A DNA stretch of 64,000 nt from Botryllus schlosseri (GCA_051294905.1 CM119386.1:806001-870000); one strand, 5' to 3'; shown: positions 690 through 64,000, counted from the stretch's first letter. Numbers and translations: made by a program. Notes: a model not told the origin generated them from the sequence alone.

Positions 690-905
690 GAGCTTCTTGG
701 TGGTACAGAACTTCAATTTACAATTGAATAGTATATTCATATTGAAATGAACCCGACTATTTTCGGCTGACAGTCGTCAGTAACTAGTAGAGAATGATAT
801 ACAATGTTATTTTCCATTCTCTACTAGCTGCTGACGATTACCCCTGACAAGTGTCAGCCGAAAATATTCGGGTTCATTTCAATATGGATATACTATCCAA
901 TTAAA
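690..905. repeat. High-copy palindromic MITE-like family A (representative copy)
   Basis: Arm core ttgaatagtatattcatattgaaataaacccgaatattttcggctgacactcgtcaggggtaatcgtcagcaactagtagagaa and its reverse complement. About 15 copies or fragments: 690, 5315, 12558, 18295-18695, 19180, 21890, 24440-24695, 28375-28615, 35620, 36360-36665, 41305-41565, 46315, 51770, 57175, 63300. Confidence 0.8.
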
Positions 906-2539: not shown

Positions 2540-2733
2540 TCACCGGAACGATCCATTGGTAGAACCACCGGCGGATACATCGTCGTAACGTTTCCGGCTT
2601 CCCGATTCGCCCATGTCCAAGTTTGTTTTTCCTTGGCGTTTCTTCTTGTATTGAACGAAGCATAGCACCCCGATCGCAATAATCAAGATCACAGCCAACA
2701 CACCGAGAACCACCCCCGCGATTGCACCTCCAT
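2540..2733 (-). CDS. Terminal exon: transmembrane helix plus ~37-aa cytoplasmic tail
   Basis: Acceptor TTTCTAG, phase 1. Translates (D)GGAIAGVVLGVLAVILIIAIGVLCFVQYKKKRQG...RYDDVSAGGSTNGSFR*: a 24-aa hydrophobic helix followed by a KKKR stop-transfer. TGA at 2540-2542. Confidence 0.88.
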
Positions 2734-5700
2734 CTAGAAAACACACATGTGAGACTTGAATCATGGTCACGAAAATAAAAGCTGCATATCAATGATTTAG
2801 TAACCGTTGATAATGTTTGCGTGCTCTCTTTTCTATTTTAATTCATGGTTTTCCGGAAATGCTACGGGAGAACTGCGTAGTGCGAAACAAGCCAAGCTCG
2901 GTGTAGGCTACAGATGTTTGTCATTGTCATGCTAATGAGAACGAACTTATATGAGCTTAATTTGGAATTGAAACCAGTTTCCAAATCTTTGCAAATTCAG
3001 TAATTCTAATTCAAATCTAATTTGGAAAAAAACGAGTAGCTGTAATTCCAATTGCAGTCGAATTTGGATAGGTTGAAAATTTTCTTATTGTCACCTCTAT
3101 CTTGACAGCGGCGTCCCAAGTAAAACGCAGCACAGCTGCAAGTGGGGTCTTCAGCGTCTTGTTGTCGATTGCAAGTCGCACCGTTCAAGCAATACGAGCC
3201 ACCGTCCAATTCGCATTGGTCTTCACAACTACAAAGATCATCAACAGTGCTTAGGAACGTGAATGTGCGGCTGTTAATAGCCGGTAGTAACATAGCTAGC
3301 TGGAAGAGAGAGGTTTTCAAATGTATAATGCCACTGACTATAGATACAAAACCTGGACATATTCAAATTAAATTATTGCTCAATGAGTCTTGATGCTACA
3401 CTTCTATTTATGATAGCTTCTCTTACTTTTCATCCAGTTTGCATAAGGGTTGTACAAAATAATTTTTGTTTTAAATTTTAGCGGCAATTCGATGGAATGT
3501 TAGGTTGGCTAACAAACGCTGTACACCAAATTTGGCACAGAAGTGAAGCTACATGAGTTTGAAAATTTTGAATTTATTGTAAAAAAATCTCAAATTCTAC
3601 ACCATGAAATGGTGACGTTGTCTAAAAAACAATGCGTAAAAATTCGGACTAAATTCCATCCAGCAGAAGCGAAGTTATTGAAGTTGAAAGTTTTGGATTC
3701 GAAAAATATACCATTGCAGTGGGTAATCCCACAATTATTAATGAAAAACTCGTGTAACTTTGTTTCTACGGGTTGGAATTGAGTCAAATTTATTTTCCTT
3801 CGTTTTAGAAACAGCAATTCTGTAACTAAAGCAGTCCGTAATTTGCAAAGCATCCCATCACTCAAAGAAATAAAAAGTTAACAGACAAATGCAGTAGTAC
3901 CTGACAAGGAAATTAATTCCACGATTTATATCTAGGTAACTTATATGGACACAAGGTGGGTATGTCTATGTATGTTGAAATCACATAAGAAAGCAGATTT
4001 GAAATGACTATCACATATTCCAGAGTTACAGAATCATGTTTAAATGAATATTTGTATATTGGCAATTGTGAAATTCTTCAGTAATACAAGGACCATGTAG
4101 TAATAAATCATTGTGCAACGTTCGGATGTTAAGAATAATCAAATTATTGTAATGTAGGCTACTGTACTTGTTCAAATGAGGTATTGCTAGGCAATACGAA
4201 TAAAGAACAATTATTGATTACCTTGTGCCTGGTGCAGATGAGTTGTTGTCTCTGTATGTCGCATTGCAAGAACAAGTATATCCCGGGTCTGCGTTTGTGC
4301 AGGTAGCGTACGCGTGGCAATTGTTGTCGCTCGAGTCAAGGCACTCATTAAAATCTGGTACAAATGGAAAGTAAAAACATGAATAATTGAATTCAATAAA
4401 TAAAAAATGAAAATTGAACAAAAAAAAAACCATTAAAAAGAGAGAATCTTTATTCGTCATCCGTGCAAATCAAGAACATAGAGAACAAAAAAGAAAATTG
4501 CGTGAGAGATATATGCGGGAAGCTCAATTTAACATTGTCAAAAACAAAGAACACACATCATCAAAGAAAACTGATTCAAAGAATATTATGAAAAATAGCT
4601 TGCAAGCTTTAAATCTAGTAGCATATTACATAAGTCATCTTTGCTATGAATACGATTTTTTTGATTAGTCATGTAAAATCAGTAAAAGCACACTTATCTA
4701 AAGACAGGTATCATTGCAAAAAAACTATAATTCTGTAACTAAAACAGTCTGTAATTCAAAATACATTCTACCATTTAAAGAAATAAAATGTCAACCGATG
4801 AATGTGCAGTTCATCAATTACCTGTGACACTGACAATGGATGCCGCTCTATCAGTATTATTGTTGTTAAGTGCACTCGCAATAGCAGTTGAGTCGTCATC
4901 CACAGTTGCAGGTATCCGCACATCACTAGTGCCAACGACACTGCCGCTTGTAAATGTGTAAATTTCTGACGTTATGACGGACACATCGAATGACGTTCTG
5001 AAAAGTGTGGACGTCTACAAATAGAAAGGAATTAAGAAATTGAGTTGGAACGGAGTGAAAAAGGTTTTACCGTGTTCTGAAACAGCAAAACTGTCTCCTT
5101 ATAGTAAGCGGAATTCCGATCTTCAAGGCTGGTGTTGAAAGTGATGTCTGTTCTTCTGATTACAATGGTACTGGTGAAGAAGGCTGGATAAAAACAATAC
5201 TATAGTTTAAAACAAGCAAAATGGAGGATTGCAATGAGTTTTTTGACTTAAAAGACAATGACATTTATCATTACTTCAGTAGTAGCCATTGTTACATTGA
5301 TTGATTTATGGAAGAGTATTTCAACAGATTCTTGGTGGTACAGAACTTCGACATACCATTGAATAATAAATTAATATTGAAATAAACCCGAATACTTTGG
5401 ACGTATGTTCGTCATGGGTAGTACTAGTTGCTGACGATTAACCCCGACGAGTTTCAGCCGAAATTATTTCAATGTGAATAATTTTATAACTCAAGATACC
5501 ACACGATTGCAATACAATTAGAACTTGAAGATGGCGATGCCAATTCAAGTAGTTGGTTAAAAGGATGTAATGGAAATTTGATAGTTGAAAAAATAAAAAT
5601 TATGTCTTAGAATTTCAGGGAAAAGTGGTTTGTCGCATGTGTCACAAAGCCGATCTGTTTTAGAGTAAAAAGAGTTGGTAGAAATTACGGTCTGGACATT

Positions 5701-8700
5701 TTGAGAAGATTATTGTTGAATAATGTCACATCTGACCGTTGCGACTGTAAGTTATTCATAGATTCAAATTTTGTTTCATCCAGACATGAATATAATATTA
5801 GTCTTATTGTGAATAATTCTAGCTTCATTTGGACTAGTATTTCGTACTAGGATGATTTTGATATGTATAGGCCAATAGATGTTACCTTGTATAAATAAAT
5901 GATACAAATAGCATATAAATATTCTCACTCACCCTGGCATACACCGTTGAAATTCGCTTGGAATGACGAGCATGTGACTAAAAAGAGAACATATTTACAG
6001 AGTGCAAGAAAACAAGATAATTGACTTAAAATATTGCTGTTAGTATCCAGAAATACGTCTAGCAACAGCTTATGTTAATTTTTGCGAACACCACAACCAC
6101 AGTGGTTTGAAAAGTCAGAATATGATTAAGTCTGAGATACAGAAGCGCTTTCACACTTCATATCTTACCGATCTATCTTTGCTTAGATTATCCCTGTCTG
6201 ACTCAAATTGCAATTTATATATCCAGCCATTAAACTTCATCAGTCAACAGTTCCAGTTTCCTGGATTGCATTGACCAGATTTCAGGTCAAGATTGATCAC
6301 ATTCTATAGACTCCACCTGAATCAATCTAACTGCCAACACACCAATGTTAAAATAGATTTATGTTCTAAGGAACACCCATATTTTGCTTCAAAGACAGGT
6401 GTAACAACTTTCAGTGTGTCTCTATCACATCAATCTGCAGAAGTAACAAAGTTATAAGTTATGGGCCAGTGTAGCTGCTACATTCTCTAGTGTTAGTTGC
6501 ACATCTCCAAAACTAGGATGAATTATTGGTCACAGTTCCTCATCTACATTGTGACTACTCAAAATCATGCTGCCTTTTCATTGGAATCAGATCTGGTACA
6601 TAACATTCATGATAAAAAAAACTTGATGTTTTTGTGATAGAATTGTCATAAGATTGAATTAATTCTAACAAATGAATTACTTTCAATGCCTCCGAAATAT
6701 ATTTGCAACATACTTCCTACGATAACGGAAAAGGTTTGTTCGTGTTACTGTAGGCAACATTTTAAAGACTCTGTGAGGGCACTTTCTATTAGACATGATG
6801 TTGAACAAATAAGTAAATGAGCAGAACAATGATTTTATAAGAGAAATCATAAATAAATTGGTATCAAATCATTGACTCCAATGTAAAGGCAGCAAGGATT
6901 ACCGGGATTGCTTGATGAAGACAGGACTGTCGTAGTGTGATAGCTGCTACTTGTTTTATTTTGGTTTGGTATGGTGCCAACAGTTGTTTCAATAACATGT
7001 GATGTGGTTGAATCAATTATAATGGAAGCAATAGTGTTGTGTGTAGTAATAGTTGTGTCTGATATTGTACCAGTGATCGATTCAGTAGCTGGACTTGGAG
7101 TAGCTGTATTCGATGAGCTGCCAATGGTAGATTCAGTATCTTGACCGAACGTAGTAGCTGGGACAGATGTACTACTAGGGGTAGTTTCAGTTGCTTGACC
7201 CAAAGTTGGAAACAGTTGAGATGCATTGCCTGTGGTAGATTCAGTAGCTTGACCGAACGTAGTGACTGAATTAGTTGTAGTACCAATGGTAGTTTCGATT
7301 GCATGACCTGAAGTTGGAAACAGATGAGATGCACTGCCTGTGGTGGATTCAGTAGCTTGGACAGAGGTATTATCTAGATTCGTTGTAGTATCAAGATCAG
7401 TTGTAGATTCACCAGTTTCAATTGAACCAGTTGCTGAGTCTGATGTAATACCAGCGACAGATTTTGTAGCCTGATCTGCAGTAGTAACTGGATGTGTTCT
7501 ACTACCATTTGTAGATTCAGTAGCTTGACCAGAGGTAGTAACTGAATTTGTGGTAGTATCAATCGCAGATTTGGTAGCTTCACCAGAAGTAGTAGCTGGG
7601 TTTGATGTAATACCAGCGATAAATCGAACATTATGATCTGACGTCGTACCTGGATTTGGTCCAGTACCAGCGGTAGATACAATAATAGGACCTGGAGTAG
7701 TAGCAGGGGCTGATTTACTGCTAGTGGCAAATTCAATTGCTTGATCTAAAGTAGTGGAGTGATATATTGTGGCATCAGTGGTAGCTTCAGTAGAGTTACT
7801 TGAAGTAGTAGCTGGGGCAGATGAACTACCACTAGATTGAGTAGCTTGACCTGTAGTGGAAACTGAATTTGTGGTACTACCAGTCTCAGATTCAGTAGTT
7901 TTACCAGAATTAGTTACATAGTCTGGTGTAATGTCAGTGACAGATTCTGTGGCTTGATCTGAAGTAGTAGCTGAAACCATTGTATTAGCAATAGTAGATT
8001 CAGTAGTTTCACCAACATCAGTAGCTGGATTTGATGTAATACCAGCTACAAATCGAGCATGATGATCTGATGTAGTGCTTAGATCAATTTCACTATCAAC
8101 GGTAGACTCAGTTATTGAACTCGGAGTATTAGCCGGGGCAGATATAATGCCAGTGACAGATTCAGCTGCTTGATCTGCAGTAGTAGCTAGATCTAATCTA
8201 CTACCAATGGTAGACTCAGTTGCTGGACCTCCCGTTGCAGATTCAGTAGCCTGTCCTGAAGTATTGGTCAGGTCAGATGTAATGCCAGTGGTAGAATCAG
8301 TAGCTTCACCGGTAGTAGACGGATAGGATGTGCTACCAATGGCTGATTCAGTTGCTAGACCTGAAGTAGTGGCTAAGTTTGATGTACTACCAATCACAGA
8401 TTCCGTATCTGATTCAGTATCTTGAACAGAAGTAGAAGCTAGATCCATCGTAATGTCAGTAGCCAATTCTGTAGTTTCACCTGAAGTGCTACCTTGGTTT
8501 GATGTAATATCAGCGATTAATCGAGCATGTTGGCCTGATGTAGAAGATGGGTCTGTTGTATTGCCAACGGTGAACTCAGTAATCGAACCTGGAGTACTAG
8601 CTCGGGCTGATGTAATACTAGTGACAGATTGAGTTGCTTGATCTGAATTAGTAGCTCGATGCATTTTCGTATTAGAAAGAGACTCGGTAGTTAGACCTGA

Positions 8701-11700
8701 GGGAGTAACTGTTGTGCTACCGGTGGTAGATTCAGAAGCTTGGCCTGTAGTACGTGGGACGGATGCACTACGTATGTTAGATTCAGTTGCTAGACTTGAA
8801 GAGGCAGTTGGCACAGATGTATTACCCATCCTAGATTTGTTAGCATGACCAGATGTAGTAGCTAGATCAGTTGTAGAATCAGTAGTTTGGTCTGAATTAG
8901 TAGCCGGTGTAATAACTGTGACAGATGCTGTAGCTTCACCAGAAGTAATAGCTAGATCCAATGTAGTAACAGCAGTTATCCGCACTTCATTAGTTTGACC
9001 TAAAGTAGCAACTGGGTTTGATGTGATACCAGCGATATATCTAGCATGTTGATCTGACGTAGTACGTGGATCAATTGTAGTACCAGTAGAGTCAGTTGGA
9101 CCGGGAGTAGTAGCTGGGTTTGATGTAATGCCAGTGACCGATTCAATTGCTTGACCTGCAGTAGTAGCCCGAGAAGATACATCTCCAGTTGTAGATTCAG
9201 CAGCCTGTCTCGAAGTATTAGTTAGGTCGGATGTAATGCCAATGGTAGAATCAGTTGATTTTCCCGAAGTAGTAACTGAATTTGTTATAGTGCCAATGAT
9301 AAATTCACTAGCTACACTGGTAGTAGCTGGGTGGGATGTGCCCCCAGTGGTAGATTCAGTTGTTTGATCTGCAGTAGTAACTGAATCTGTTGCAGTAACA
9401 GTGGCATATTCAGTAGTTTTGCCTGAAGTAGCAACTGGGTCAGATGTAATAATAGTGGTAGATAAAGCCGCTTGGCTGGTTGTAGCTGAGTCTGATATAT
9501 TACGCGTAGTAGATTCAGTAGCTTGACTAGATGTGGTAGCCAGATCTGTTGTAGTATCAGTGATAGATTGAATAGTTTTACCAGAATTAGTCGTTGAGTC
9601 TGATATAATTCCAGTGTCAGATTCAGTAGCTTGACCAGAAGTAGCAGTCAGATCCATGTTAGTATCAGCAGTAGATTCAATACTTTGACCTGAACTAGTA
9701 GCTGAATTTGATGTAATACCAGTGATAAATCGAGCATGTTGGCCGGACGTACTATCAAGATTTGTTCTAGTGCCAGCGGTAGACTCTGTAATTGGACCTG
9801 AAGTCGTAGCAGGGGCTGATTTAATATCAGTGACAAATTCAGTTGCTTGATCTGAAGTAGTAGCAACAGTAGTAGCTTCAGAAGTTCGACCTGAACTTGT
9901 AGCTGACTCTGCTGTAATAGCAGCTGTAGCTTGACCAGAAGTAATAGACATATCCATTGAACTATCAGCAGTTATCAGTACTTCATTAGTTTGACTTAAA
10001 GTAGTAACTGGGTTTGCTGTGATGCCAGCGATAAATCTAGCATGTTGATCTGGCGTAGTACGTGGATCAATTGTAGTACCAGTAGACTCAGTCATTGGAC
10101 CTGGAGTAGTAGCTGGGGCTGACGTAATGCCAATGACAGATTCAGTTGCTTGACCTGCAGTAGTAGCTCCAGCAGATACACCTTCAGTTGTAGATTGAGC
10201 AGCCTGCCCCGAAGTATTAGTTAGGTCGGATGTAGTGCCAGTGGTATGATGGGTAGTTTTTCCTGAAGTAGTAACTGAATTCGCTGTGGTACCAACGGTA
10301 GAATCAGTAGCTTCACTGGTAGCAACTGGGTCGAATGTGTTCCCAATGGTAGATTCAGTAGTTTTATCTATAGTAGTAACTGGGACAGATGTACTGATAA
10401 CGGCAGAGTCCGCCACTTGACCGGTTGTAGCTGAGTCTGATGTATTACCAGTGGTAGATTCAGTAGCTTGAGCAGAATTAGTCATTGAGTCTGATGTAAT
10501 GCCAGTGACATATTCCGTAGCTTGACCAGCAGCAGCAGTTCGATCCATCTTAGTATAAGCAGTAGATTCGATAGTTTGATCTGAGCTAGTAGCTTGATTT
10601 GATGTAATACCAGCAATATATCGAGCACGTTGGCCCAACGTAGTACCTAGATTTGTTCTAGCAGTAGACTCGGTAATTGGACCTGAAGTCGTAGCAGGGG
10701 CTGATTTAATATCAGTGACGGATTTTATTTCTTGACCTGATGTAGCAGATACATACATTGCAGTAGTTTGACCAGTGGTAGATTTAGCCGCTTGACCTGA
10801 CGTAGTAGCTGGATCTGTTGTAGTACCGTCGTTAAAGTCAGTAACTGGGCCTGAAGTAGTAGCCGGGGCTGAAGTGTCACCAGTGGTAGTTTCAGTATGT
10901 CGACTTAAACTAGTAGCTAGATTTGATGATGAAGTCCTAATGGTTGCAGTGACAATTTCAGTGAAGAGAATTGGTATAGTGTTCGTATAAAGTGTCTGTG
11001 ATGTTGAATTTGACAGTGCAAAGTTATTTTTTTCCGTCGTTTTCATTGTTATGTAATTAGTAAAAGCCATCACACCATCCGTTGAACTCGATACACCTGA
11101 CCAAGACATCATTCAACAGCAAATATTAACAACCTTCAACAGCAAATATTAGAAGAACTCCAAACAGTAAAGCCAGTAGAAAAATTAATATTCATCACAA
11201 TACCCCGATATATAACATATTCATTGTCAATCAGTCGTATAAATTGCCATAATTAGTCTCCCTCACACAGAAAATACAGGTCTACTTATCATATCGACAA
11301 AAGAACGCTTCAAATCTATAAGACATCATGTTCTGAAATTTGTGGTGAATGATGCGTAATCTAAATTTATAAAAACAACAAAATTCAACATTCTTACATA
11401 TCAGAGGCATGTCATCCAGAGAATTGTACTTCCCATTGAGAGAGAGTGCATGTTGTACAAAAATAAAACTAAATGTAAAATATGCAACTCGCTACCGACA
11501 CTTCAAATTGATTATTTTCTTGGATCAATCAATTTTTATACAAATCTACTGTTATAACTAGGGCTGGACAAATTCGAGTACTTGAGAGATTCTGAATTGA
11601 GTTTAAACAGTACCGTATGAATGGAAGAATATAATGGCGTTTCTACATCAGATTCAAGATGATTTGGTATTTCCACGGCCATGCCTATTTCATTGCACTT

Positions 11701-56700: not shown

Positions 56701-59700
56701 ATTGGAGGTAACGGTGGCAACATCGGAGGAGGTGGTGGGGTCCCATCTACAAAAATATTTGAAAAAAAATGGAGACCTGATGGATCATGTAATCAATTAG
56801 ATTGAATGCCCCTTTCAACTCAGTCTACAGAATCATTATGACGCAAAGCAATAACTCCATATTGTTAATTTATTTACTAAAAACTTATCGACTGACTCTC
56901 ATCAGCAGCTAACGTAATAATACGGCGAGTCAAAATCGAAACTAGCGGCCAGTGACAGTGAATTTTCCATAGTTTCTCATGGTCATTCTCTTTTTCATTT
57001 GAAACTCCAGGAATCTACAAAAATGCCTATAACAATTCTCTGTCGCCGAAAGGAACACTTGGAACCCTACACTCTTAGAATATTTCATAATGTTCAGTTT
57101 TGTTATTTTCGGCTATTTATAACCGAATATGTATGTAACGATTATTGTGTACCACTGCACGACACTATCCAGTAGTAGTCAGTTATTGAATTGAATAGTA
57201 TATTCAGATTGAAATAAACCCGAATATTTTCGGCTGACACTTATCAGGGGTAATTGTCAGCAAATATAAGATAATTGAAACGGAGATTGTATGCCACACT
57301 TGTTCGTTATTGATATCATTTTGTCACAAAGACAAAATATTTTGTACATTTCAAATCTAATTCACTGTAATGACGTTTCCTAGTGATGAGAGTCAGTCAA
57401 AGCGCTCTTAATGAATAAATTAACAATACGAAGGTATTATTTTGCATAATTCTGAAGATATGTACCCAAAATAGCATGTTTGGAATTATTTATGCAATAC
57501 CTTCGTATTCTACTTCCACCAACATGGGAGGCAGAGGTGGTAACATTGGAGGAGGTGGTGGAGTCTCATCTATAAAATAATTTTGAGAAAAATGGATAGC
57601 AGCAGAGATCTTGACGGCCTTCGAGTTGGGTGTCCTTTAAACTCCGTCTATATCAGTGGTTCCCAACCTTTTTCGACTCATCGCCCCCTTTTGAAGCTCC
57701 ACACCGATCATCGCCCCCAAATATTGGGAACCGGAAAACAGCACTTCATCAGTCCCCCGAAAAAACGTTGATCTTTGGCCCCATAAGGTGATAAACCAAA
57801 CCACAGACCCCCCTCAGCCAGTTGGCTTTTTGTCGCTACATATCAGCTATACCCTATTTCGTGTACTGTTTGGTGAGTCACCGTATTTTGCCTAAACAGG
57901 TGAAGCGCGACAAATTTATATAATTCATGTTTGAATCGGTCAATATGGTCGATGTGGTATGTGGATTTGACCTCCTATATCTGCTATGTCAGAAGATATG
58001 GAACCAAACTAAATGACGCACATGATTTCATATTGGTATTTCTTTACTGGCAAATAACTTCTTCCTTGCGGGATGGCATTTGTCCTGTAGGGTTAAGGTC
58101 GCCAGGTGAGGGACATTCGACGCCAGCCATTGAGGCGCCTATGGACAAATAAACATATATGTATATCTATCGAAGTTTTGGGTCAGCACAGGGGCATTCC
58201 TTTTCGGCCAAGGTGTTCTCGATGCTGACCGTTCTGGCACACTTCTCGGAGTCGCATGTTACATGGCCTCTAACTTCATATCTTGGTACGTCGTGGCGCA
58301 GTATTGGCTAACGCCGAAGTCTCATATTACCACAAATCCTGCGTATTTTTGTTGGATGAGGCGGACCCCAACATCAAGATACATGAAAATATTAAATCGC
58401 GCCCAGCGCGAAATTTTTTTGAAAAAGTCGCATGAATTTCTAAAAAATTACTCTATCATTCATGTTAATTCACGAAATAATTTTGGGCTTTTTTCGATTT
58501 CGGGCCCCCCAGCCCTAATTAGGGGGTTCGGGGTGCGGTAATTACGGTCCCGACTCCAATATAGCCGATTTACCGCGCCATCGCCCCCCTATCGCCCCCT
58601 TCGTTGTTTTCGTCCCCTTGGTCTGTTTTCGCCCCCTTCGTTATTTTCGCACCCATAGACAGCCAAATCGCCCCCTGGGGGGCGATATCGCCCACGTTGG
58701 GAACCACTGGTCTATATGATCATTATTTCTGGAATACCTTCATATTCTAATTCCTCCAACATAGGAGGCAGTGGTGGCAACATCGGTGGAGGTGGTGGGG
58801 TCCCATCTACAAAAAAAAATTCGAAAAAAAAGGACTGCATAGAGATCTTCTGAATCATAGAAATGATTCTTATCAAATCATCATGGTTGCAATACCTTCG
58901 TACAGTAATTCCTCTAGCATGGGAGGAAGCGGAGGCAGCATTGGAGGTGGAGGCAGAGTTTCGACTGGAATGATATCACAAAATTCTTAGTATTGCAGGA
59001 AATCATGCGGCCACATGAAAAAATTGACGTGGAGCAAATTCTACTGTAAGAATTCTGCAAAAGTGCCGCCGATCAAGCTCGTACTGAAGTGAAGGGTGTC
59101 AGAGATTGACAAATAGTCCGAAAAGACGGATTCTTCAGTCTTCATTGGAAAAGGATAGCAGCAATAAGTCCCATCATAGCAAAGCAGCAAACATAACATT
59201 CTAGTAATCAAAGACGGAGAATACCAGTATACTCATTATTTCAGAGTATTATCACTGGAAAAGCAGTGAGAATATGTTCTCCGTAAAGGAAGAACTACAT
59301 TAATTAATCCATGAGATATTCCATGCAACACTCAAAAGCTGTAGATCGGAATCAAGTTCAAAACTTGATCGCATTAAACCCACTCAATTGCTGAATGCAG
59401 TAAGAAGAATCTCATTGAGATTTGAATGCTCCACAACTAAATGTCGTGATTCAACAAAACTCAGAGTTCCACTTGGCATTATATGTGAAATTGGAGAAAA
59501 GAAGCTTGTGAACAAATTATTTTGCGACAACAAAATCTAAAGAATTCGCTATAAGAATTGGTTCATCATAGCAATGTATCTCCAAGATGAGTAGGTTTCC
59601 AGTAACCTCAATCATCTCAAGACCCCGGAACCTTGGCAGCAGTTTTCATGGAGTGAAGAGATCAGGGTCGAGTAAATTTTGAGCAACAGCTAGGGAATTT

Positions 59701-62700
59701 CACGGATAAGCTTGCAGTTATTCGTTTCAACTCCGAAGAAAGAGTCAGAAGCAAAGAAGTCTTCTATCTCTCCATTGCATGAAAATATTCAACTACAGCG
59801 GCGATAGACAGCTTGAGTCAAGAGTAGGCACCACATTAGCCACTGACTCTAAGAATGACTGTACCGTCGCGAGCATCCAAGTGTCACTACTCAGCCTTGG
59901 CACAAGACGTATTCCAGCGAAATTGCTACATGCAACTAACTCGTTACCTACTATACATTACCTTCTTCCACATCCTCTCCTATCATAATCGGAGGAGGAG
60001 GTGGGATTGTGGGGGGAGGTGGTATATAGTCTGAAAATTTCGTTAACTATGGATATCGATATATTTCAATTAGAGACCATCAGCATTCTGCACGCCGGAG
60101 TATCGCCAGCCACTGATACCAGACATGGACAACTACATAATATTAGTTGTGTATATAGACCAATAATAATGAAATGTTGGTAATCTAATTAATTTGCAAA
60201 ATGTTTCTATGCTCTAATTGTAATTCTAGTACATTTTCCATTTGAATAATGCGAAACAGGCCAAGCTTAGAGTACAAGTATTTGTTTTTCTCATGCTTAC
60301 GAGGATGAGCTCCAATTTTATATGAACTGGACCTGATTTTTGGTGTACCTCTTTGTAATTCGGAATTTAGTTCAATATCCAAGTGTTTGCTTTTCAGTAA
60401 ATCTAATTTGAAACCAAAATTCTAATTCCAATCTAATTTGGAAAATATTTTCTAGTTGTCCAGCAAACCAAAAAGGTGGCCGAGTCCACGAGGCTTGAAA
60501 GTCAAATGTTATTTATAAATTTATTTACCTTGGTGTCGAAACGATTAATTAAAATAGTAGGCTCATCATCTAGTTGTTAGATATGTTCCTAAATTACCAT
60601 CTGTTATCTCTTCCATCGGAGGTGGCGGTGGTGGTGTCGGTGGTGGTGGTGGAGTTGTACCTGGGTAATTTCAAGATGGAATAAGTTTACTGAGTTTTAA
60701 AAAGTTTTACATATTACTTTTGATGTCAAAATTCATCATGATTACAAGCATATATGTATCAAAACATGCACACGCGTTACTGCACACAAAACAAACAATG
60801 TATGATTCTCAGCATCCATAGTAGTATGTACTATGTTCCATGTGACGGTCTGCAATCTTTGACCAGAAGATGAAAGTTAAGCATGAAATGTATGTTAGTT
60901 ACCTTCAATCAATTCCTCAGACTCAAACAGCAATGGAGGAGGCACCGGCGGTGGTGGTGGGACGAAATCAGCTGGACCATGCAAACAAATGTTATTCAAA
61001 ATCCATGCAGTAACAAAAATTCAGGTACGGTAGGGTTATTTTCAGACACTTCAAACGCAAGCTCCTCAGTGACATTTCTGGTTCTAGACAATCCGTCCAT
61101 CAAATATTTAACAATTTTATATCTCAATTGCAAAATGCAAGATGTTGGACACTTATTAGAAAAATGCAACATCAAATGTTAAATGGATATAGAAATTTGG
61201 AATGTTTTTCTGCTTTGCGTTGTAATATAGAGTCCATCTGTAAATGCTGCACTTTTCTACAATTTGTGTAATACAAGTCGAATGTGAAAGAATTTTAGTA
61301 CAACATTCCTTAAATTTTGCGAAATTTGACAGAAATCAGCATCGCTTTCAAGAGAAACTGAACAATCAAAATCAAATAATTTGGCTTTAGCAAGGCATAG
61401 CTTCACAGAAACTTCAATAGAACCATGTATAATATGTGTACGTACGTACATGCATACATTTGTCGTAATTACATTTTGGGTTGAGAACCATATTCTCGGC
61501 TAATTTCACTTTGTTCGGTAAAGCGTGTTTTATCTTGCAGTAGAATGGCAAGTTGGCATATCATATGGTAAAATGCGATCAATCTACTTGGTAGGGTAAA
61601 TGGTTTGTTACCTTCCGACATTTCTTCGAACTCGAATGGTGGAGGTGGGACCATTGGAGGAGGCGGAATCACAGTAACTGAATATGATTGGTTAGTTAGC
61701 CACAAGCATGCATGGATGAAAGAATGAACATTCCGCAAGTGCACAACACAACACATATTAATAATCTATCGAACAATTGACTGGCCAATTATGGACTTAT
61801 AAATTGGGCTAGGCACAATGATTTGAGTACGAGAGTCTGAGTCGCGTGTATCAATTCGAATTATTCACATCCAGTAGCGACAGATGATTTTTTATTACTG
61901 AAGTTACATCATCATCATCCATTAACAATAATACCACATAAAAACCACACCTACAATAATAGTGACAAATTTCAGATATCACAACTTTAAACTGATAAAG
62001 ATTTGCCAGGATACGGAAATTGTAATACGTAGGAACATAAATACCTTCTTCCAACTCCATGATGTCAAAAGGAGGTGGTGGTGGAATTGGTGGCGGAGGA
62101 ATGAGCGATTCTAAGAGCGTCAACAGGAATTTCATTGACAAATTTGGCAAATATTACAATTCTAGCACGATTTTAGCACCTCTTACTCTGATTCTGTAGT
62201 TTGATACCGTAGTTCTTACTCAAACTGACATAGTTTGACATTTATGAACGTACATTGGGGTTTTCCGCAAATTTACAGTACGGACAAATCTTGCAGAGTT
62301 TATTCAGTCGGAGTCAACACACCAAATAAACCAGTTTATTCTAAAACACATCATTCTTGAATATCGCCAATCATATTTGTTAGTAGAAGTTATCGAACAA
62401 CCATTCACGGTAATTGTCACGTTCATGTTAGAAAGCGTGATTTGTCAAATCCGTTATTTGACAAATATTTCTATTGTGTCTATATATAGATAGTTATATC
62501 TATATACGTATATAGTTTTTCTGTATAATTATAATTACATATGCAGTTATCTCACCTTCCTCTTCCATCTCTTCATATGGGGGTGGCGGTGGGACCATTG
62601 GCGGAGGGGGTACGGTCGATGCTGAAACATTATTATTTGTTTCAAAGAATTGACCATCGTTCATCAAATTTAGCCTCATACTTCACTACAAACAGGCAAA

Positions 62701-63613
62701 TTCTAGACTGGGACAGCTAGTTAATAATTATAGCGAAATGCTGGTAACCTAAATCTAATTTAATTTGTGGAATGTTTATGTCTTCAAATTTTAATTCTAA
62801 TCTAACTCTGGTTTTCTTATGAAGCTAGCCATGTTTGGTGTACAGGCATTTGTCGTAGTTATGCTTATGAGGATGAACTCTTGATTTGATATGAACTAAG
62901 CTTGCTTTTTGTAAAGTTTCTTTTTACTTCCGAATTTCATTCCTTTTCCGAGTCTTTGTGAATTCAGAAATACTAATTCCAATTTTATTTCAAAAACAAC
63001 TCTGTAGCTATAACTCCAATTTGGTGAAGCTTAAAACTATCTAGCTATCTAACTCTGCTAAGTTCACTGCTAAACAAGGTAATGAAACATAGTTACTTTC
63101 ATCCTCTGGTGGTGGTGGAGGCGTAATCGGTGGTGGCGGAACCACTGTTGTGGCTGAAATTAATATGTTCTTTCAATATCAAGCTCAAATATGATTTTCT
63201 GCTACTACATCAAGTGCTTATGACTTCACCAGCCAAGGCTGTGTCAACATAAGGAGTTTGTGTACCTTTTAAAAATAGTACATTGAACGCTCTCTTATTC
63301 AAAATTTCATGCTGGTGACGTCATATTTTGTGATATGATCGTTGATATACAATGCTATCTCCAATTCTCTACTAGTTGCTGACGATTACCCTTGACGAGT
63401 GTCAGCCTAAAATATTTGGGTTCATTTCAATATGGATGTACTAGGCAATTTTTAATTACAACAAAGTAGGTCACAGAATAATTTGAAAAGGAATTTGCCC
63501 CAAGACTACAAAACATGGTTTAGTAGTATCATGATATAAATGCTCACCGTTCTTTTCCTCTCCCGGGGGAGGAGGTGTAGGCGGCGGCGGTGGCGGAACC
63601 GTGATATTGGTCA
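2540..63613 (-). CDS. Giant multi-exon type I membrane mucin-like protein (polyPro repeats - ~80 EGF - NIDO - AMOP - VWD - FN3x3 - PTS mucin - SEA - EGF - TM); 5' end outside window
   Basis: About 74 exons bounded by AG/GT (one inferred GC donor), with compatible phases at each junction I traced. Domain motifs are recognisable in the spliced translation. Summed exon length is about 20 kb (~6,700 aa). Confidence 0.85.
2815..3092. repeat. Interspersed repeat family B (TTCTAA/AATTAG-rich, 250-450 bp; representative copy)
   Basis: Core gaaaatgctac.ggagaactg..tagtgcgaaacgagccaag...gtacagacatttg. Copies at ~2815, 19745, 34725, 52620, 60185 and 62700 share one orientation; the copy at ~40030 is inverted. 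Confidence 0.72.
3095..4354 (-). CDS. Two juxtamembrane EGF exons (4222-4354 cbEGF; ~3095-3270 EGF)
   Basis: DFNECLDSSDNNCHAYATCTNADPGYTCSC and CELDGGSYCLNGATC...CSCAAFYLGRRC. The second exon's acceptor is uncertain (3270 or ~3250, both phase 2). Confidence 0.8.
4822..5977 (-). CDS. Cys hairpin exon (5933-5977) and SEA domain exons (5071-5183, 4822-5014)
   Basis: TCSSFQANFNGVCQ, then FFTSTIVIRRTDITFNTSLEDRNSAYYKETVLLFQNT / TSTLFRTSFDVSVITSEIYTFTSGSVVGTSDV. This matches the SEA pattern F..L.D..S..Y and the GSVV motif. Phases 1-1, 1-0, 0-1. Confidence 0.8.
6903..11096 (-). CDS. 4,194-bp Thr/Ser-rich mucin (PTS) exon, 1,398 codons
   Basis: Lies within the 1421-aa ORF 6847-11112. Acceptor TGGTCAG at 11097-11098 and donor CCCG/GTAATC at 6902, both phase 1. 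Degenerate ~17-aa repeats of the type TSxPATTSGQATES. Confidence 0.88.
11559..11978. mobile_element. hAT-type MITE (420 bp) with GACTCGA(G/A)T subterminal motifs
   Basis: TIR TAGGGCTG...CAGCCCTT and perfect 8-bp TSD GTTATAAC (11551-11558, 11979-11986). Related decayed copies at ~16100-16400, 17830-18080, 20906-21360, 27360-27880, 38060-38160, 54800-54880 and 63770-64000. Confidence 0.8.
12022..13603 (-). CDS. Two small Thr-rich mucin exons (13466-13603, 12022-12339)
   Basis: FVASTTLDTTTTTTGPVTTTTTTTD... and SPTTSTSASATVE...STTPESTTPETTTPES. Both phase 1-1, with lengths divisible by 3 (138 and 318). Confidence 0.8.
14242..14701. mobile_element. Solo LTR (460 bp) nested in a non-autonomous DNA element
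   Basis: Termini TGTAAC...GCTACA, 5-bp TSD CCCAC at 14237-14241 and 14702-14706. Removing it restores ggattacccac-(c/a)gtccaggctat, as in the uninterrupted copy near 33560. Confidence 0.8.
14990..18224 (-). CDS. Three fibronectin type III domains in 7 exons (18125-18224, 17571-17680, ~17105-17235, 16894-16977, 16618-16723, 15886-16029, 14990-15103)
   Basis: FN3 motifs FIYVTWSKP / SLNFDTEYTISMQSVY; ITSLESATSYTFEAVC; AKINWTAP..DYQIQF / DLALDTNTVISVFSLN. Phases consistent. Confidence 0.78.
15421..15802. mobile_element. hAT-type MITE (382 bp)
   Basis: TIR TAGGGTCACCATA...TATGGTAACCCTA and perfect 8-bp TSD TGTAAAAT (15413-15420, 15803-15810). The same right terminus recurs at ~25860-25875. Confidence 0.82.
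18772..23091 (-). CDS. Tandem (cb)EGF block, 9 exons (22902-23091, 22104-22296, 21396-21518, 20729-20851, 20269-20397, 19527-19639, 19328-19444, 19003-19152, 18772-18942)
   Basis: Repeated D(I/V)(N/D)EC...C.N..GS(Y/F).C.C..G(Y/F) consensus, with canonical splice sites in compatible phases. Confidence 0.88.
21083..21132. repeat. Short 11-bp tandem repeat (ttaacagtttc)x4
   Basis: Directly visible in the sequence. Confidence 0.7.
23792..24922 (-). CDS. Ig/cadherin-like linker between VWD and EGF block (24764-24922, 23792-23970)
   Basis: PPAWVTNITEIEVQVGESFTFTIEA...IDPATGIFTWTPTDN...VIFMATADG...VKLCDCSNNGSC, which resembles the region after VWD in invertebrate NIDO-AMOP-VWD-EGF mucin-like proteins. 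Confidence 0.7.
25503..29058 (-). CDS. von Willebrand factor type D domain and C-terminal extension, 7 exons (28955-29058, 28772-28859, 27924-28043, 27163-27330, 26343-26522, 26067-26218, 25503-25620)
   Basis: IGDPTFQTWDGNSYSFSAVGEYHLI, KGLYGFYDDNATNDF, FGSSWIVYENESLFNY...FTPIY: MUC4/SUSD2/mesh-type VWD motifs. Confidence 0.85.
28100..28175 (+). mobile_element. tRNA-derived SINE head or tRNA pseudogene
   Basis: A-box TGGCGCAGTGG (28107-28117) and B-box GGTTCGATTCT (28150-28160) at tRNA spacing. The acceptor and anticodon stems do not pair well. Confidence 0.55.
29170..29781. mobile_element. Non-autonomous hAT element (612 bp)
   Basis: TAGGGCGATTTT...CACCCTA termini, 8-bp TSD CTCATGAC. Internally colinear with 32455-33239. 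Confidence 0.82.
29893..32368 (-). CDS. AMOP domain, 4 exons (~32242-32368, 32105-32178, 30916-31024, 29893-30069)
   Basis: C..W...EASP-ICPPT, CFQKS...GAICCYG, GGQLVRYH, DICCQTRELCDLYKEKRPS follow the AMOP cysteine pattern. The donor at 32242 is inferred from phase and intron length. Confidence 0.8.
31272..31904. mobile_element. Foldback MITE (~630 bp, arms ~290 bp)
   Basis: 31272-~31562 is the reverse complement of ~31625-31904, flanked by the direct repeat (A)ATGGACA. Related partial copies at ~215-450, 2030-2290, 3455-3800, 14010-14900, 22360-22820 and 33290-33750. Confidence 0.8.
32455..33239 (-). mobile_element. hAT deletion derivative (785 bp) retaining the transposase C-terminal dimerisation segment
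   Basis: Decayed left TIR, right TIR AAAAATTCGCCCTA, 8-bp TSD CTAATCAG. Minus ORF 32670-32906 reads ...TAAAIERSFSVLGKLLSKDRQFLPENV, matching the hAT C-terminal ERxFS motif. Confidence 0.82.
33879..37716 (-). CDS. NIDO domain region, 5 exons (37584-37716, 36052-36260, 35360-35508, 34461-34662, 33879-33991)
   Basis: FVFGGRSYDRFYILFNGAIVL, ISPFYAD, ITITWENM, DTFQLVLTTDGSVTYAFFLF, NAGKLGVFGY: nidogen G1/NIDO consensus. Confidence 0.85.
34141..34430. repeat. Minisatellite, ~35-45-bp units (tagttctagttctagttgca.attttgaaaagtgag)
   Basis: About 7 degenerate tandem units, with a second shorter array at ~39175-39355. Confidence 0.75.
36740..37473 (+). mobile_element. 5'-truncated CR1/L2-clade LINE 3' end
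   Basis: ORF 36887-37186 (HSHYTRSSSKGNIYLP...SIDYSVPIIWNALPPHIRE...FKKALFDHLL) matches the CR1/L2 ORF2 C-terminus. It is followed by a 3' UTR, AATAAA and a (CT)n tail. A similar tail occurs at ~35295-35325. Confidence 0.78.
37791..40459 (-). CDS. EGF block, 7 exons (40328-40459, 39828-39950, 39447-39613, 38938-39020, 38750-38877, 38350-38459, 37791-37920)
   Basis: For example DVNECETEGLCGANAECMNVFGSYICEC and DINECQNADACPASGSLCVNREPGYICTC. Phases chain correctly. Confidence 0.85.
41727..43646 (-). CDS. Giant EGF exon D (1,920 bp, 15 EGF modules)
   Basis: Within ORF 41656-43674. Acceptor CTTTACAG, donor CAAG/GTTGCT, phase 1-1. Confidence 0.9.
44345..46264 (-). CDS. Giant EGF exon C (1,920 bp, 15 EGF modules)
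   Basis: ORF 44316-46220 extended upstream to acceptor TATTTCAG. Donor AAAG/GTAATA, phase 1-1. Confidence 0.9.
46596..48518 (-). CDS. Giant EGF exon B (1,923 bp, 15 EGF modules)
   Basis: Within ORF 46573-48540. Acceptor TTTTAAAAG, donor AAAG/GTAGGT, phase 1-1. Confidence 0.9.
49768..51684 (-). CDS. Giant EGF exon A (1,917 bp, 15 EGF modules)
   Basis: Within ORF 49718-51823. Acceptor CATTACAG, donor ACAG/GTGAGT, phase 1-1. Confidence 0.9.
52327..52561 (-). CDS. Linker exon (52507-52561) and cbEGF exon (52327-52446)
   Basis: TLNCSDGFQYSDITFECE / DIDECKFVQCNVSDHECFNTEGSFFCDCPEGSRDVDGFCK. Phases 0-1 and 1-1 connect the polyPro exons to exon A. Confidence 0.78.
53041..63613 (-). CDS. Array of 18 polyproline/acidic micro-exons
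   Basis: 63548-63613, 63097-63153, 62556-62621, 62045-62110, 61612-61677, 60903-60971, 60598-60660, 59962-60030, 58896-58964, 58738-58806, 57501-57569, 56678-56746, 56311-56379, 55773-55838, 55102-55167 and 54468-54533 are all phase 1-1 and 57-69 bp. 54161-54216 is phase 1-0 and 53041-53193 is phase 0-0 (double unit). All are AG/GT bounded, for example DGTPPPPPMLPPLPPMLEEFQDE. Confidence 0.82.
57654..58709. mobile_element. hAT (Charlie/Buster-like) non-autonomous element (1,056 bp)
   Basis: 14-bp perfect TIR CAGTGGTTCCCAAC/GTTGGGAACCACTG, 8-bp TSD GTCTATAT, clustered ATCGCCCCC subterminal repeats at both ends. A lone similar TIR occurs at 63682. Confidence 0.9.
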
Positions 63614-64000
63614 CTGGAGAAATAACTGCATGTTGAATGTGATCTATCATTTGCATAAAACAGGATAGTCTACAATAGGTTCAGTGGTTCTAAACCTTTT
63701 TAGCTTGGGAAGAGTAAGATTTCGGCAAAAATTTTACCGGTCAGTAAACCTTCGTACATCAAAATCAGAATTCTAATGACTCGGGTGATGAGTCAAAACG
63801 AATCGGACTCGATTCGCAATTTTTAGTTGACTCGAGTCATTTACTTAAGAACGGAATGTGTCTCGACTTGACTCAATTTGTGAACAGTCAACACGTTGCT
63901 CCCTAATTTGAACTCGAACTTGACTAGATGGTGAATTGAAAATGATTCGACTAGATGAAATAAAATTGACTTGAGACTTGAAACCTTGTGGCTTGGTTAC

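What the first reader, a model, noticed from the sequence alone, without database searches (positions are those of the whole stretch)
2540..63613. Chimeric ~6,700+ aa transmembrane mucin uniting the MUC4-type (NIDO-AMOP-VWD) and SEA-type cassettes, with about 80 EGFs, FN3s and a polyproline N-terminal region
Seen: one phase-consistent exon chain with this domain order. Established: vertebrate transmembrane mucins use either PTS-SEA(-EGF)-TM (MUC1/3/12/13/16/17) or PTS-NIDO-AMOP-VWD-EGF-TM (MUC4, which lacks SEA). Here both cassettes sit in series, and the PTS lies after VWD, next to SEA. Inference: an undescribed giant surface glycoprotein, possibly for adhesion, tunic or epidermal coat, or recognition. 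I do not recognise this architecture but could not search databases.
Basis: partly seen in the sequence, partly recalled or inferred. Interest (0 to 1): 0.85.

Follow-up and report, generated by a model that had tools for sequence, protein, structure and literature searches.

The report
Giant sea-squirt MUC4-like membrane mucin
This is a real, very large sea-squirt gene for a membrane-anchored mucin-like protein, but its "hybrid" build (MUC4-type block plus SEA domain) is the usual build of MUC4 relatives in invertebrates, so it is a new member of a family that is in the databases but barely studied.

Summary
My own exon-chain search on the minus strand gives 71 exons and about 6,800 aa with no stop.

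The domain order is as described:
- polyproline micro-exons
- about 60 EGFs in four 1.92-kb exons, then more EGFs
- NIDO-AMOP-VWD, then an Ig-like domain
- about 10 EGFs
- 3 FN3
- about 1,570 aa of PTS
- SEA (GSVV)
- 2 EGFs, TM, and a 37-aa tail

The interpretation "undescribed chimera" is not supported.
- Styela clava RefSeq LOC120328603 (4,273 aa, 35 isoforms) is colinear with the window gene (38.8% identity over about 2,000 aa) and contains every module in one gene.
- Of 53 non-bird relatives carrying the NIDO-VWD block (echinoderms, a hemichordate, amphioxus, tunicates, Trichoplax, molluscs and cnidarians), 45 have a SEA domain C-terminal to the block. None of 14 bird mucin-4 proteins does.
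- A 2022 paper already reports SEA in cnidarian mucin4-like proteins.

Corrections and additions:
- The polyproline region is probably internal, and the 5' end lies outside the window.
- The VWD cleavage motif is GDPT instead of GDPH.
- The juxtamembrane EGF is of the EGFR-ligand type.
- The large PTS next to SEA is uncommon in the family.

Other notes of this scan on the same window cover the giant exons and the micro-exons.

The parts
53041..63613 (-). Array of polyproline micro-exons. There are 14 exons of 56-69 nt, all but the last (54216-54161, phase 1-0) in phase 1-1, plus one 153-nt exon in the best chain. Two further phase 1-1 candidates lie at 60971-60903 and 58964-58896. Each encodes a PPPPP-x-PP-x-PP unit followed by an acidic tail.
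   Evidence: Styela isoforms differ almost only inside the homologous polyproline region.
52327..52561 (-). Two exons (52561-52507, 52446-52327) encoding one EGF that links the polyproline array to the giant exons.
41727..51684 (-). Four tandem paralogous exons of about 1.92 kb (51684-49768, 48518-46596, 46264-44345, 43646-41727). Each is phase 1-1, has about 92 Cys and encodes about 15 EGF/cbEGF.
   Evidence: Pfam EGF_CA/EGF_3 E 1e-54 to 1e-61. (repeat families D4, D14, D17).
37584..40459 (-). Eight exons encoding further EGF-like domains before NIDO.
33879..36311 (-). NIDO domain exons (36311-36052, 35508-35360, 34662-34457, the doubtful 34112-34054, and the start of 33991-33879).
   Evidence: Pfam NIDO E 6e-6. 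Aligns to Styela NIDO, which scores E 4e-20.
29893..33991 (-). AMOP-like region (exons 33991-33879, 32368-32227, 32178-32105, 31024-30916, 30069-29893) with eight cysteines at the family's conserved positions and the CC..LC.LY..RP motif.
   Evidence: alignment. Pfam AMOP scores 20.3 bits in Styela and 23.7 bits in chicken MUC4, both under the 25-bit cut-off.
26343..29094 (-). VWD domain exons (29094-28955, 28859-28772, 28043-27924, 27330-27163, 26522-26343). The cleavage motif reads GDPT instead of GDPH.
   Evidence: Pfam VWD E 3e-4 on the first exon. Styela VWD E 2.4e-9. Motif count.
23792..26218 (-). Linker matching the family's MUC4-type C8-3 region, then an Ig-like domain (exons 26218-26067, 25620-25503, 24922-24749, 23970-23792).
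   Evidence: Aligned with Styela, Patiria and chicken MUC4. C8-3_MUC4 and He_PIG/Big_9 are seen in relatives.
18772..23091 (-). About 10 EGF/cbEGF domains in 8 exons.
14990..18224 (-). Three FN3 domains in 7 exons.
   Evidence: Colinear at 32.6% identity with Styela 3447-3711. That Styela stretch hits fibronectin FN3 chains at E 3e-11.
6903..13603 (-). PTS (mucin) domain of about 1,570 aa in exons 13603-13466, 12339-11956 and 11096-6903. The large exon is a degenerate 54-nt (18-aa) tandem array.
   Evidence: composition; D1: 30 copies.
4822..5977 (-). SEA domain (exons 5977-5933, 5183-5071, 5014-4822) with the G|SVV autoproteolysis motif.
   Evidence: Family SEA profile 39.4 bits, E 9e-12. Pfam SEA E 0.02 on one exon. 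The Styela orthologue's model matches MUC16 and TMPRSS SEA structures.
3095..4354 (-). Two juxtamembrane EGFs (4354-4222 is a cbEGF; 3270-3095 is of the EGFR-ligand type, CX7CX5CX10CXCX8C with GRRC).
   Evidence: In one search the top PDB hits are EGF, TGF-alpha, epigen, Spitz, amphiregulin and neuregulin, from E 5e-5.
2540..2733 (-). Transmembrane helix (GAIAGVVLGVLAVILIIAIGVLCFV), a 37-aa cytoplasmic tail, and the TGA stop at 2542-2540.

Best explanation
The window holds most of one ascidian gene for a type-I membrane glycoprotein of at least about 6,800 aa. It belongs to the MUC4-like (NIDO-AMOP-VWD) family in that family's invertebrate form, which keeps a membrane-proximal SEA domain.

Shown here: the exon chain, the domain order, orthology to Styela clava LOC120328603, and the family-wide pairing of the MUC4 block with SEA.

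Inferred mechanism:
- The protein folds in the ER and its SEA domain cleaves itself at G|SVV. The huge ectodomain then stays attached non-covalently to an EGF-EGF-TM stub and can be shed under force, as in vertebrate SEA mucins.
- The O-glycosylated PTS of about 1,570 aa and about 80 EGFs (about 41 with the calcium-binding consensus) form a long, stiff stalk. This stalk holds the NIDO-AMOP-VWD adhesion block, and whatever lies upstream of the window, far from the cell surface.
- The phase 1-1 polyproline micro-exons act as cassette exons that tune stalk length.
- The VWD Asp-Pro self-cleavage site is degraded (GDPT), so SEA is probably the only built-in cleavage point.
- The EGFR-ligand-type EGF left on the stub may signal.
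For: - One stop-free, phase-consistent chain of 71 exons.
- A colinear tblastn chain of 39 HSPs to Styela P0002 from 39948 to 3102.
- One BLASTP HSP of 2,141 columns at 38.8% identity, 1,283 bits, plus the C-terminus at 34%.
- P0002 is one RefSeq locus with 35 isoforms. It contains a signal peptide, EGFs, a polyproline region, NIDO, AMOP, VWD, Ig, EGFs, FN3, PTS, SEA, EGFs and a TM.
- The window's NIDO-to-Ig block aligns end to end with dozens of relatives at E 1e-40 to 1e-55, and with chicken mucin-4 at E 3e-20.
- SEA is supported by a family profile, a fold match and the GSVV motif.
- 45 of 53 non-bird relatives have SEA after the block.
- In the tree, the window and Styela group at 100/100.
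- Styela isoform differences lie almost only in the polyproline region.
- GDPT occurs only in the two ascidians, against GDPH in 65 of 67 proteins.
- The juxtamembrane EGF hits only EGFR ligands at the top of the PDB list.
Against: - There are no transcript data for this species.
- The homology bonus in my gene finder means the model is not fully independent of Styela.
- Three junctions are uncertain, and the 5' end is missing.
- AMOP is below Pfam's cut-off, here and in true MUC4.
- Pfam alone does not call SEA or FN3 in the Styela C-terminus.
- The SEA fold model is only moderately confident (pLDDT 73), and it is of the orthologue, not of the window protein.
- Cleavage, glycosylation, shedding, alternative splicing in this species and any EGFR signalling are all inferred.
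Confidence: 0.8

Rival explanations
1. The chain is two or more adjacent same-strand genes, for example a polyproline/EGF matrix protein followed by a separate NIDO-to-TM mucin, joined only on paper.
For: There is no RNA evidence for this species. In Styela the order of the EGF arrays and the polyproline region differs from the window, so the region has been rearranged during evolution. No signal peptide is seen in the window.
Against: - Every junction is phase-compatible.
- No terminal exon or start with a signal peptide lies between the modules.
- The introns between the predicted exons are at most about 1.5 kb.
- Styela RefSeq joins all modules in 35 isoforms of one locus.
Confidence: 0.07
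2. It is one gene, but it works mainly as an adhesion or junction and matrix-organising protein (like other NIDO-AMOP-VWD proteins such as Drosophila Mesh or SUSD2, recalled from memory), or as a membrane-bound EGFR pro-ligand. It is not mainly a barrier mucin, and the PTS is just a spacer.
For: - Most relatives have little or no PTS after the block: only 5 of 53 have more than 100 aa.
- About 80 EGFs and 3 FN3 are typical of adhesion and matrix proteins.
- The last EGF is of the EGFR-ligand type.
- Coral MUC4-like proteins are skeletal matrix components, as cited in PMC9080433.
Against: A PTS of about 1,570 aa built from 18-aa repeats next to a cleavable SEA is the defining cassette of membrane mucins. 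The two roles do not exclude each other.
Confidence: 0.25
3. It is a decaying or unexpressed gene copy.
For: None beyond the lack of expression data.
Against: About 20 kb of coding sequence has no stop. Cysteine patterns, GSVV and splice sites are conserved.
Confidence: 0.03

Closest known systems
Styela clava LOC120328603 (XP_077970402.1 and 34 other isoforms), annotated 'uncharacterized protein'
   Same: It is the orthologue. It is colinear from the EGF arrays through NIDO-AMOP-VWD-Ig, EGFs, 3 FN3, PTS, SEA (GSVI), 2 EGFs and the TM. Both have a polyproline repeat block and GDPT in the VWD.
   Different: - It is 4,273 aa against at least 6,800 aa.
- Its PTS is about 300 aa against about 1,570 aa.
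- Styela places two EGF arrays and an extra SEA-like domain upstream of the polyproline block, whereas the window has four 15-EGF exons downstream of it.
- Its cytoplasmic tail is unrelated.
Invertebrate 'mucin-like / mucin-4-like' proteins: echinoderm, hemichordate, amphioxus, Clavelina and Trichoplax RefSeq models, and the cnidarian mucin4-like proteins of PMC9080433
   Same: They share the NIDO-AMOP-VWD-C8-3-Ig block followed by EGFs and a membrane-proximal SEA-EGF-TM. Identity to the window's block is about 24-27% over about 770-890 aa.
   Different: - Most lack a large PTS next to SEA.
- They keep GDPH.
- Their N-terminal parts differ (CUB, LDLa, SMB, HYR and others).
- BLAST finds no polyproline module in them.
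Vertebrate MUC4
   Same: The NIDO-AMOP-VWD-C8-3 block is homologous (E 3e-20 to chicken mucin-4), followed by EGFs and a TM.
   Different: - MUC4 has no SEA (0 of 14 bird sequences).
- Its PTS lies N-terminal to NIDO.
- It is cleaved at GDPH, which here reads GDPT.
- It has few EGFs and no FN3.
Vertebrate SEA-type membrane mucins (MUC1, MUC3/12/13/17, MUC16)
   Same: They share the PTS-SEA-EGF-TM arrangement, the G|SVV(V) motif and a short cytoplasmic tail. The SEA fold matches MUC16 SEA structures.
   Different: They have no NIDO-AMOP-VWD block, EGF arrays or FN3. Orthology of the SEA cassette to any of them was not tested.

Membership tests
MUC4-type (NIDO-AMOP-VWD) membrane mucin family | NIDO domain | tested here: met
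   Pfam NIDO scores 26.9 and 26.2 bits (cut-off 25) on window exon 34662-34457. The window block, NIDO included, aligns end to end with relatives, whose NIDO domains score E 4e-20 to 7e-36 in Pfam.
MUC4-type (NIDO-AMOP-VWD) membrane mucin family | AMOP domain with eight conserved cysteines between NIDO and VWD | tested here: inconclusive
   Eight cysteines and the CC..LC.LY..RP motif align with Styela, Patiria and chicken MUC4. Pfam AMOP scores 20.3 bits in Styela and 23.7 bits in chicken MUC4, both below the 25-bit cut-off. Window exons alone give no hit.
MUC4-type (NIDO-AMOP-VWD) membrane mucin family | VWD domain after AMOP | tested here: met
   The window's first VWD exon scores E 3e-4 to 5e-4, just under the cut-off because it is only a piece. 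The orthologue's full VWD scores E 2.4e-9. The whole block scores E 1e-40 to 1e-55 against relatives.
MUC4-type (NIDO-AMOP-VWD) membrane mucin family | GDPH autocatalytic cleavage motif in the VWD | tested here: not met
   The window has GDPT, as does Styela. The other 65 of 67 family proteins have GDPH.
MUC4-type (NIDO-AMOP-VWD) membrane mucin family | Vertebrate MUC4 layout: PTS N-terminal to NIDO and no SEA | tested here: not met
   The PTS lies after FN3 and a SEA is present. The region upstream of the window is unknown.
SEA-type membrane mucins | SEA domain next to the membrane with a G|SVV(V) motif | tested here: met
   Family SEA profile scores 39.4 bits, E 9e-12, against shuffles at 8.8 bits or less. 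GSVV lies in exon 5014-4822. The orthologue's model matches SEA structures 1ivz, 7sa9 and 2e7v. Actual cleavage cannot be tested with these tools.
SEA-type membrane mucins | Long PTS tandem-repeat domain directly N-terminal to SEA | tested here: met
   About 1,570 aa with 35-60% Ser+Thr and almost no Cys. A degenerate 54-nt repeat has at least 30 copies.
SEA-type membrane mucins | EGF domain(s), a single TM and a cytoplasmic tail after SEA | tested here: met
SEA-type membrane mucins | Orthology of the cassette to a vertebrate SEA mucin | not tested
   No vertebrate SEA-mucin sequences were fetched.
Invertebrate MUC4-like proteins with SEA (RefSeq 'mucin-like', 'mucin-4-like', 'uncharacterized') | NIDO-to-Ig block followed, after EGFs, by a C-terminal SEA-EGF-TM in one polypeptide | tested here: met
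   Model residues 3344-4157 form the block and 6542-6630 the SEA. The window groups with Styela at 100/100 support.

The most novel reading that the evidence does not exclude
The ascidian gene, with PTS-SEA-EGF-TM directly behind a MUC4 block in the sister group of vertebrates, preserves the layout of a single ancestral membrane mucin. Both vertebrate classes would then derive from it by domain loss: MUC4 by losing SEA and moving its PTS, and the MUC3/12/13/17-type mucins by losing the NIDO-AMOP-VWD part. In that case the loss of the GDPH histidine in ascidians and the loss of SEA in vertebrates would be alternative ways of keeping just one self-cleavage module.
Probability: 0.15. Interest if true: 0.6.

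Novelty: new member of a known kind. Interest (0 to 1): 0.33.

Why it matters
- It shows that tunicates, the closest relatives of vertebrates, keep a SEA domain in their MUC4-family gene. With the amphioxus, ambulacrarian and placozoan data, this places the loss of SEA from MUC4 on the vertebrate stem. It supports the published hypothesis that MUC4 once had a SEA.
- It provides a natural protein in which the two self-cleavage modules of membrane mucins (VWD GDPH and SEA GSVV) can be compared, since one of them is degraded here.
- It illustrates extreme modular growth: four duplicated 15-EGF exons and cassette polyproline micro-exons.
- It is not a new kind of protein. The family is widespread in RefSeq but unnamed and functionally unstudied.

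Tried and rejected
- Pfam on single exons mostly fails because domains are split. AMOP, FN3, most VWD exons and the second SEA exon gave nothing.
- The exhaustive search with the NIDO exon found only three proteins. One of them, a TPR/NTPase protein, was a false lead.
- The word-based search with the Styela block found only itself and one Patiria protein.
- A 4-seed SEA profile with default HMMER filters missed the window and Styela. It needed --max on the excised segment.
- phmmer of the Styela SEA region against the PDB found only EGFs.
- The look-up of the Styela locus DNA failed for two isoforms, so intron positions could not be compared.
- My first gene-finder runs either missed exons or over-predicted 199 tiny exons. 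They were fixed with a higher intron penalty.
- No better GT-AG alternative was found for the doubtful junctions at 29893/29094 and around 34112-34054.
- I did not type spliced protein sequences into any tool. The window's AMOP, FN3 and SEA were therefore tested only in scripts or through the orthologue.


Full report
**What is in the window**

The sequence is AT-rich (about 38% GC), has no N runs, and carries long open frames on the minus strand:
- four of 655-722 codons with about 92 cysteines each
- one of 1,421 codons that is rich in Thr and Ser

Earlier notes of this scan call the genome sea-squirt-like. This fits my best homologue, which comes from Styela clava.

**Gene model**

I wrote a splice-aware dynamic-programming exon-chain finder. 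It uses:
- a 3-periodic second-order Markov coding score
- GT/AG position matrices re-estimated over iterations
- a check for stops in split codons
- a modest bonus where a colinear Styela HSP lies in frame

After rough runs it gave a chain of 71 exons and 6,807 aa with no stop. The chain runs from an acceptor at 63613 to 2544, and the frame continues to TGA at 2542-2540.

The first giant exon most likely starts at 51684, in register with its three paralogues, rather than at my 51735.

Weak points are:
- a 59-nt exon at 34112-34054
- the donor at 29893, which leaves an insertion of about 25 aa relative to all relatives
- a possible 60-nt intron inside 19199-18772
- two polyproline exons that were left out

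The length is therefore about 6,750-6,900 aa within the window.

**Domains**

| Module | Evidence |
|---|---|
| EGF arrays | Pfam calls EGF_CA/EGF_3 at E 1e-54 to 1e-61 on each giant exon |
| NIDO | Above the Pfam cut-off on exon 34662-34457 |
| VWD | The start is called on exon 29094-28955 |
| Smaller EGF exons | Called by Pfam |
| SEA | Weak Pfam hit (E 0.02) on one SEA exon |
| EGF count | 83 CxC signatures, about 80 EGFs; about 41 have the calcium-binding consensus |
| PTS | About 1,570 aa; its main exon is a degenerate 54-nt (18-aa) tandem array |

Other domains are split across small exons and escape single-exon searches.

**Orthologue**

An exhaustive search with the NIDO exon found Styela clava XP_077970402.1, 'uncharacterized protein LOC120328603 isoform X9' (4,273 aa). 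Its cluster holds 35 isoforms of that one locus.

Sensitive tblastn gives a strictly colinear chain of 39 HSPs from window 39948 to 3102, touching nearly every predicted exon. The spliced model aligns to it in:
- one HSP of 2,141 columns (38.8% identity, 1,283 bits), covering the last EGFs, NIDO, AMOP, VWD, Ig, EGFs and FN3
- a second HSP over SEA-EGF-EGF-TM (34% identity)

The Styela protein contains these modules in order:
- a signal peptide
- EGF arrays
- a SEA-like insert
- more EGFs
- a 400-aa polyproline repeat block
- EGFs
- NIDO (E 4e-20)
- AMOP (E 6.5e-4, nearly full length)
- VWD (E 2.4e-9)
- an Ig-like domain
- EGFs
- three FN3 (E 3e-11 to fibronectin chains)
- PTS
- SEA with GSVI
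- two EGFs
- a TM and a tail

This is the best available evidence for one gene here.

In Styela the polyproline block is internal. In the window the first exon begins at an acceptor and no signal peptide is seen. The 5' end is therefore almost certainly beyond position 64000.

**SEA**

- I built a profile from family SEA segments, seeded with four Pfam-detected SEA domains (24-40 bits; three of them above Pfam's 26.4-bit cut-off). It scores the window's spliced SEA segment at 39.4 bits (E 9e-12), against at most 8.8 bits for 400 shuffles. The alignment runs through F..GSVV.
- An AlphaFold model of the Styela SEA region (pLDDT 73) has a beta-alpha-beta-beta-alpha order. Its best PDB matches are SEA domains of a MUC16 homologue, MUC16, TMPRSS6 and a transmembrane protease.
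- Language-model features point the same way.

**The family**

Searching with the homologous block of a Patiria protein returned 95 proteins. Of the sequences I kept, 67 (counting the window model and the Styela protein, which I added) carry the NIDO-to-Ig block.
- By my profile, 45 of the 53 non-bird ones have a SEA domain C-terminal to the block. The non-bird set spans sea stars, urchins, a sea cucumber, a hemichordate, amphioxus, the tunicates Styela and Clavelina, Trichoplax, molluscs and cnidarians; the two cnidarian rows and some mollusc rows lacked SEA.
- None of 14 bird mucin-4 proteins does.
- Pfam's precomputed PF01390 labels agree for about 20 of them.

The window's block aligns with these proteins at E 1e-40 to 1e-55, and with chicken mucin-4 at E 3e-20.

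AMOP is below Pfam's cut-off even in chicken MUC4. Its weakness here therefore says little.

A maximum-likelihood tree of the block groups the window with Styela (100/100) and then with Clavelina (88/95, long branches). Otherwise it follows phyla, and the deep nodes are weak.

PMC9080433 already reports SEA in sea-anemone mucin4-like proteins. It cites the idea that MUC4 lost an ancestral SEA. I found no paper on the tunicate gene.

**What is particular to this gene**

- A large PTS directly before SEA is uncommon in the family. By a crude composition test, only 5 of 53 non-bird proteins have more than 100 aa of PTS after the block, and the window's is by far the longest.
- The VWD self-cleavage motif is GDPT in the window and in Styela, but GDPH in the other 65 proteins.
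- The last EGF before the membrane has the CX7CX5CX10CXCX8C spacing with GRRC. Its top PDB matches are only EGFR ligands: EGF, TGF-alpha, epigen, Spitz, amphiregulin and neuregulin, from E 5e-5 (the same holds for Styela).
- The polyproline units are encoded by 56-69-nt exons, all but the last in phase 1-1. The Styela isoforms differ almost only inside their polyproline region, as expected for cassette exons.

**Mechanism**

This part is inferred. I take the protein to be a membrane-tethered, SEA-cleaved giant mucin-like protein.
- A glycosylated PTS and a calcium-stiffened EGF rod, of variable length through the polyproline cassettes, hold a NIDO-AMOP-VWD adhesion block far from the cell.
- SEA is the force-sensitive release point.
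- An EGFR-ligand-like EGF stays on the membrane stub.

The tissue and the biological role are unknown.

**Verdict**

The claim of an undescribed chimera does not hold. The gene is a very large new member of a widespread but unstudied invertebrate MUC4-like family with SEA.

Noticed in passing
window 28955-29094 (-): The VWD self-cleavage motif reads GDPT in this gene and in its Styela orthologue. The other 65 of 67 family proteins have GDPH.
   Followed up: partly
window 3095-3270 (-): The juxtamembrane EGF has the EGFR-ligand cysteine spacing and GRRC. Its top PDB matches are EGF, TGF-alpha, epigen, Spitz, amphiregulin and neuregulin rather than matrix EGFs.
   Followed up: partly
Styela P0002 residues 1285-1585 (homologous to window 53041-63613): Five Styela RefSeq isoforms compared with X9 differ almost only by blocks inside the polyproline region. 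This suggests the phase 1-1 micro-exons are alternatively spliced cassettes.
   Followed up: partly
window 60903-60971 and 58896-58964 (-): Two further polyproline exons in phase 1-1 with weaker acceptors were left out of the best chain. A further polyproline open frame at about 61854-62153 has no good splice sites by my matrices.
   Followed up: partly
window 32673-32957 (-), inside the intron between AMOP exons: An open frame with a weak hAT-transposase dimerisation-domain match (E 0.0095, below cut-off), probably a decayed hAT fragment. A 145-nt repeat pair at 29527-29671 and 32981-33125 lies nearby.
   Followed up: partly
window 795-902, 18587-18694, 21927-22029, 28373-28475, 36489-36591, 41466-41573, 57189-57291, 63343-63450: A dispersed repeat family of about 100 nt occurs in both orientations in introns (families D10, D13, D15, D16 and inverted pairs I2-I14). 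It is SINE- or MITE-like. A second family (D8) lies at 236-394, 14701-14859, 31600-31758 and 33566-33724.
   Followed up: no
window 31273-31903: Nested inverted repeats in an intron: 166-nt arms at 89% complementarity and 104-nt arms at 90%. This may be a MITE or a hairpin-forming insertion.
   Followed up: no
Styela P0002 residues 559-700: The Styela orthologue has a SEA-like segment (Pfam SEA E 5e-4) between its first two EGF arrays. No counterpart was seen between the window's giant exons.
   Followed up: no
window 6903-11096 (-): The PTS exon is built from a degenerate 54-nt (18-aa) unit, with at least 30 copies at 60-85% identity and spacings in multiples of 54.
   Followed up: partly
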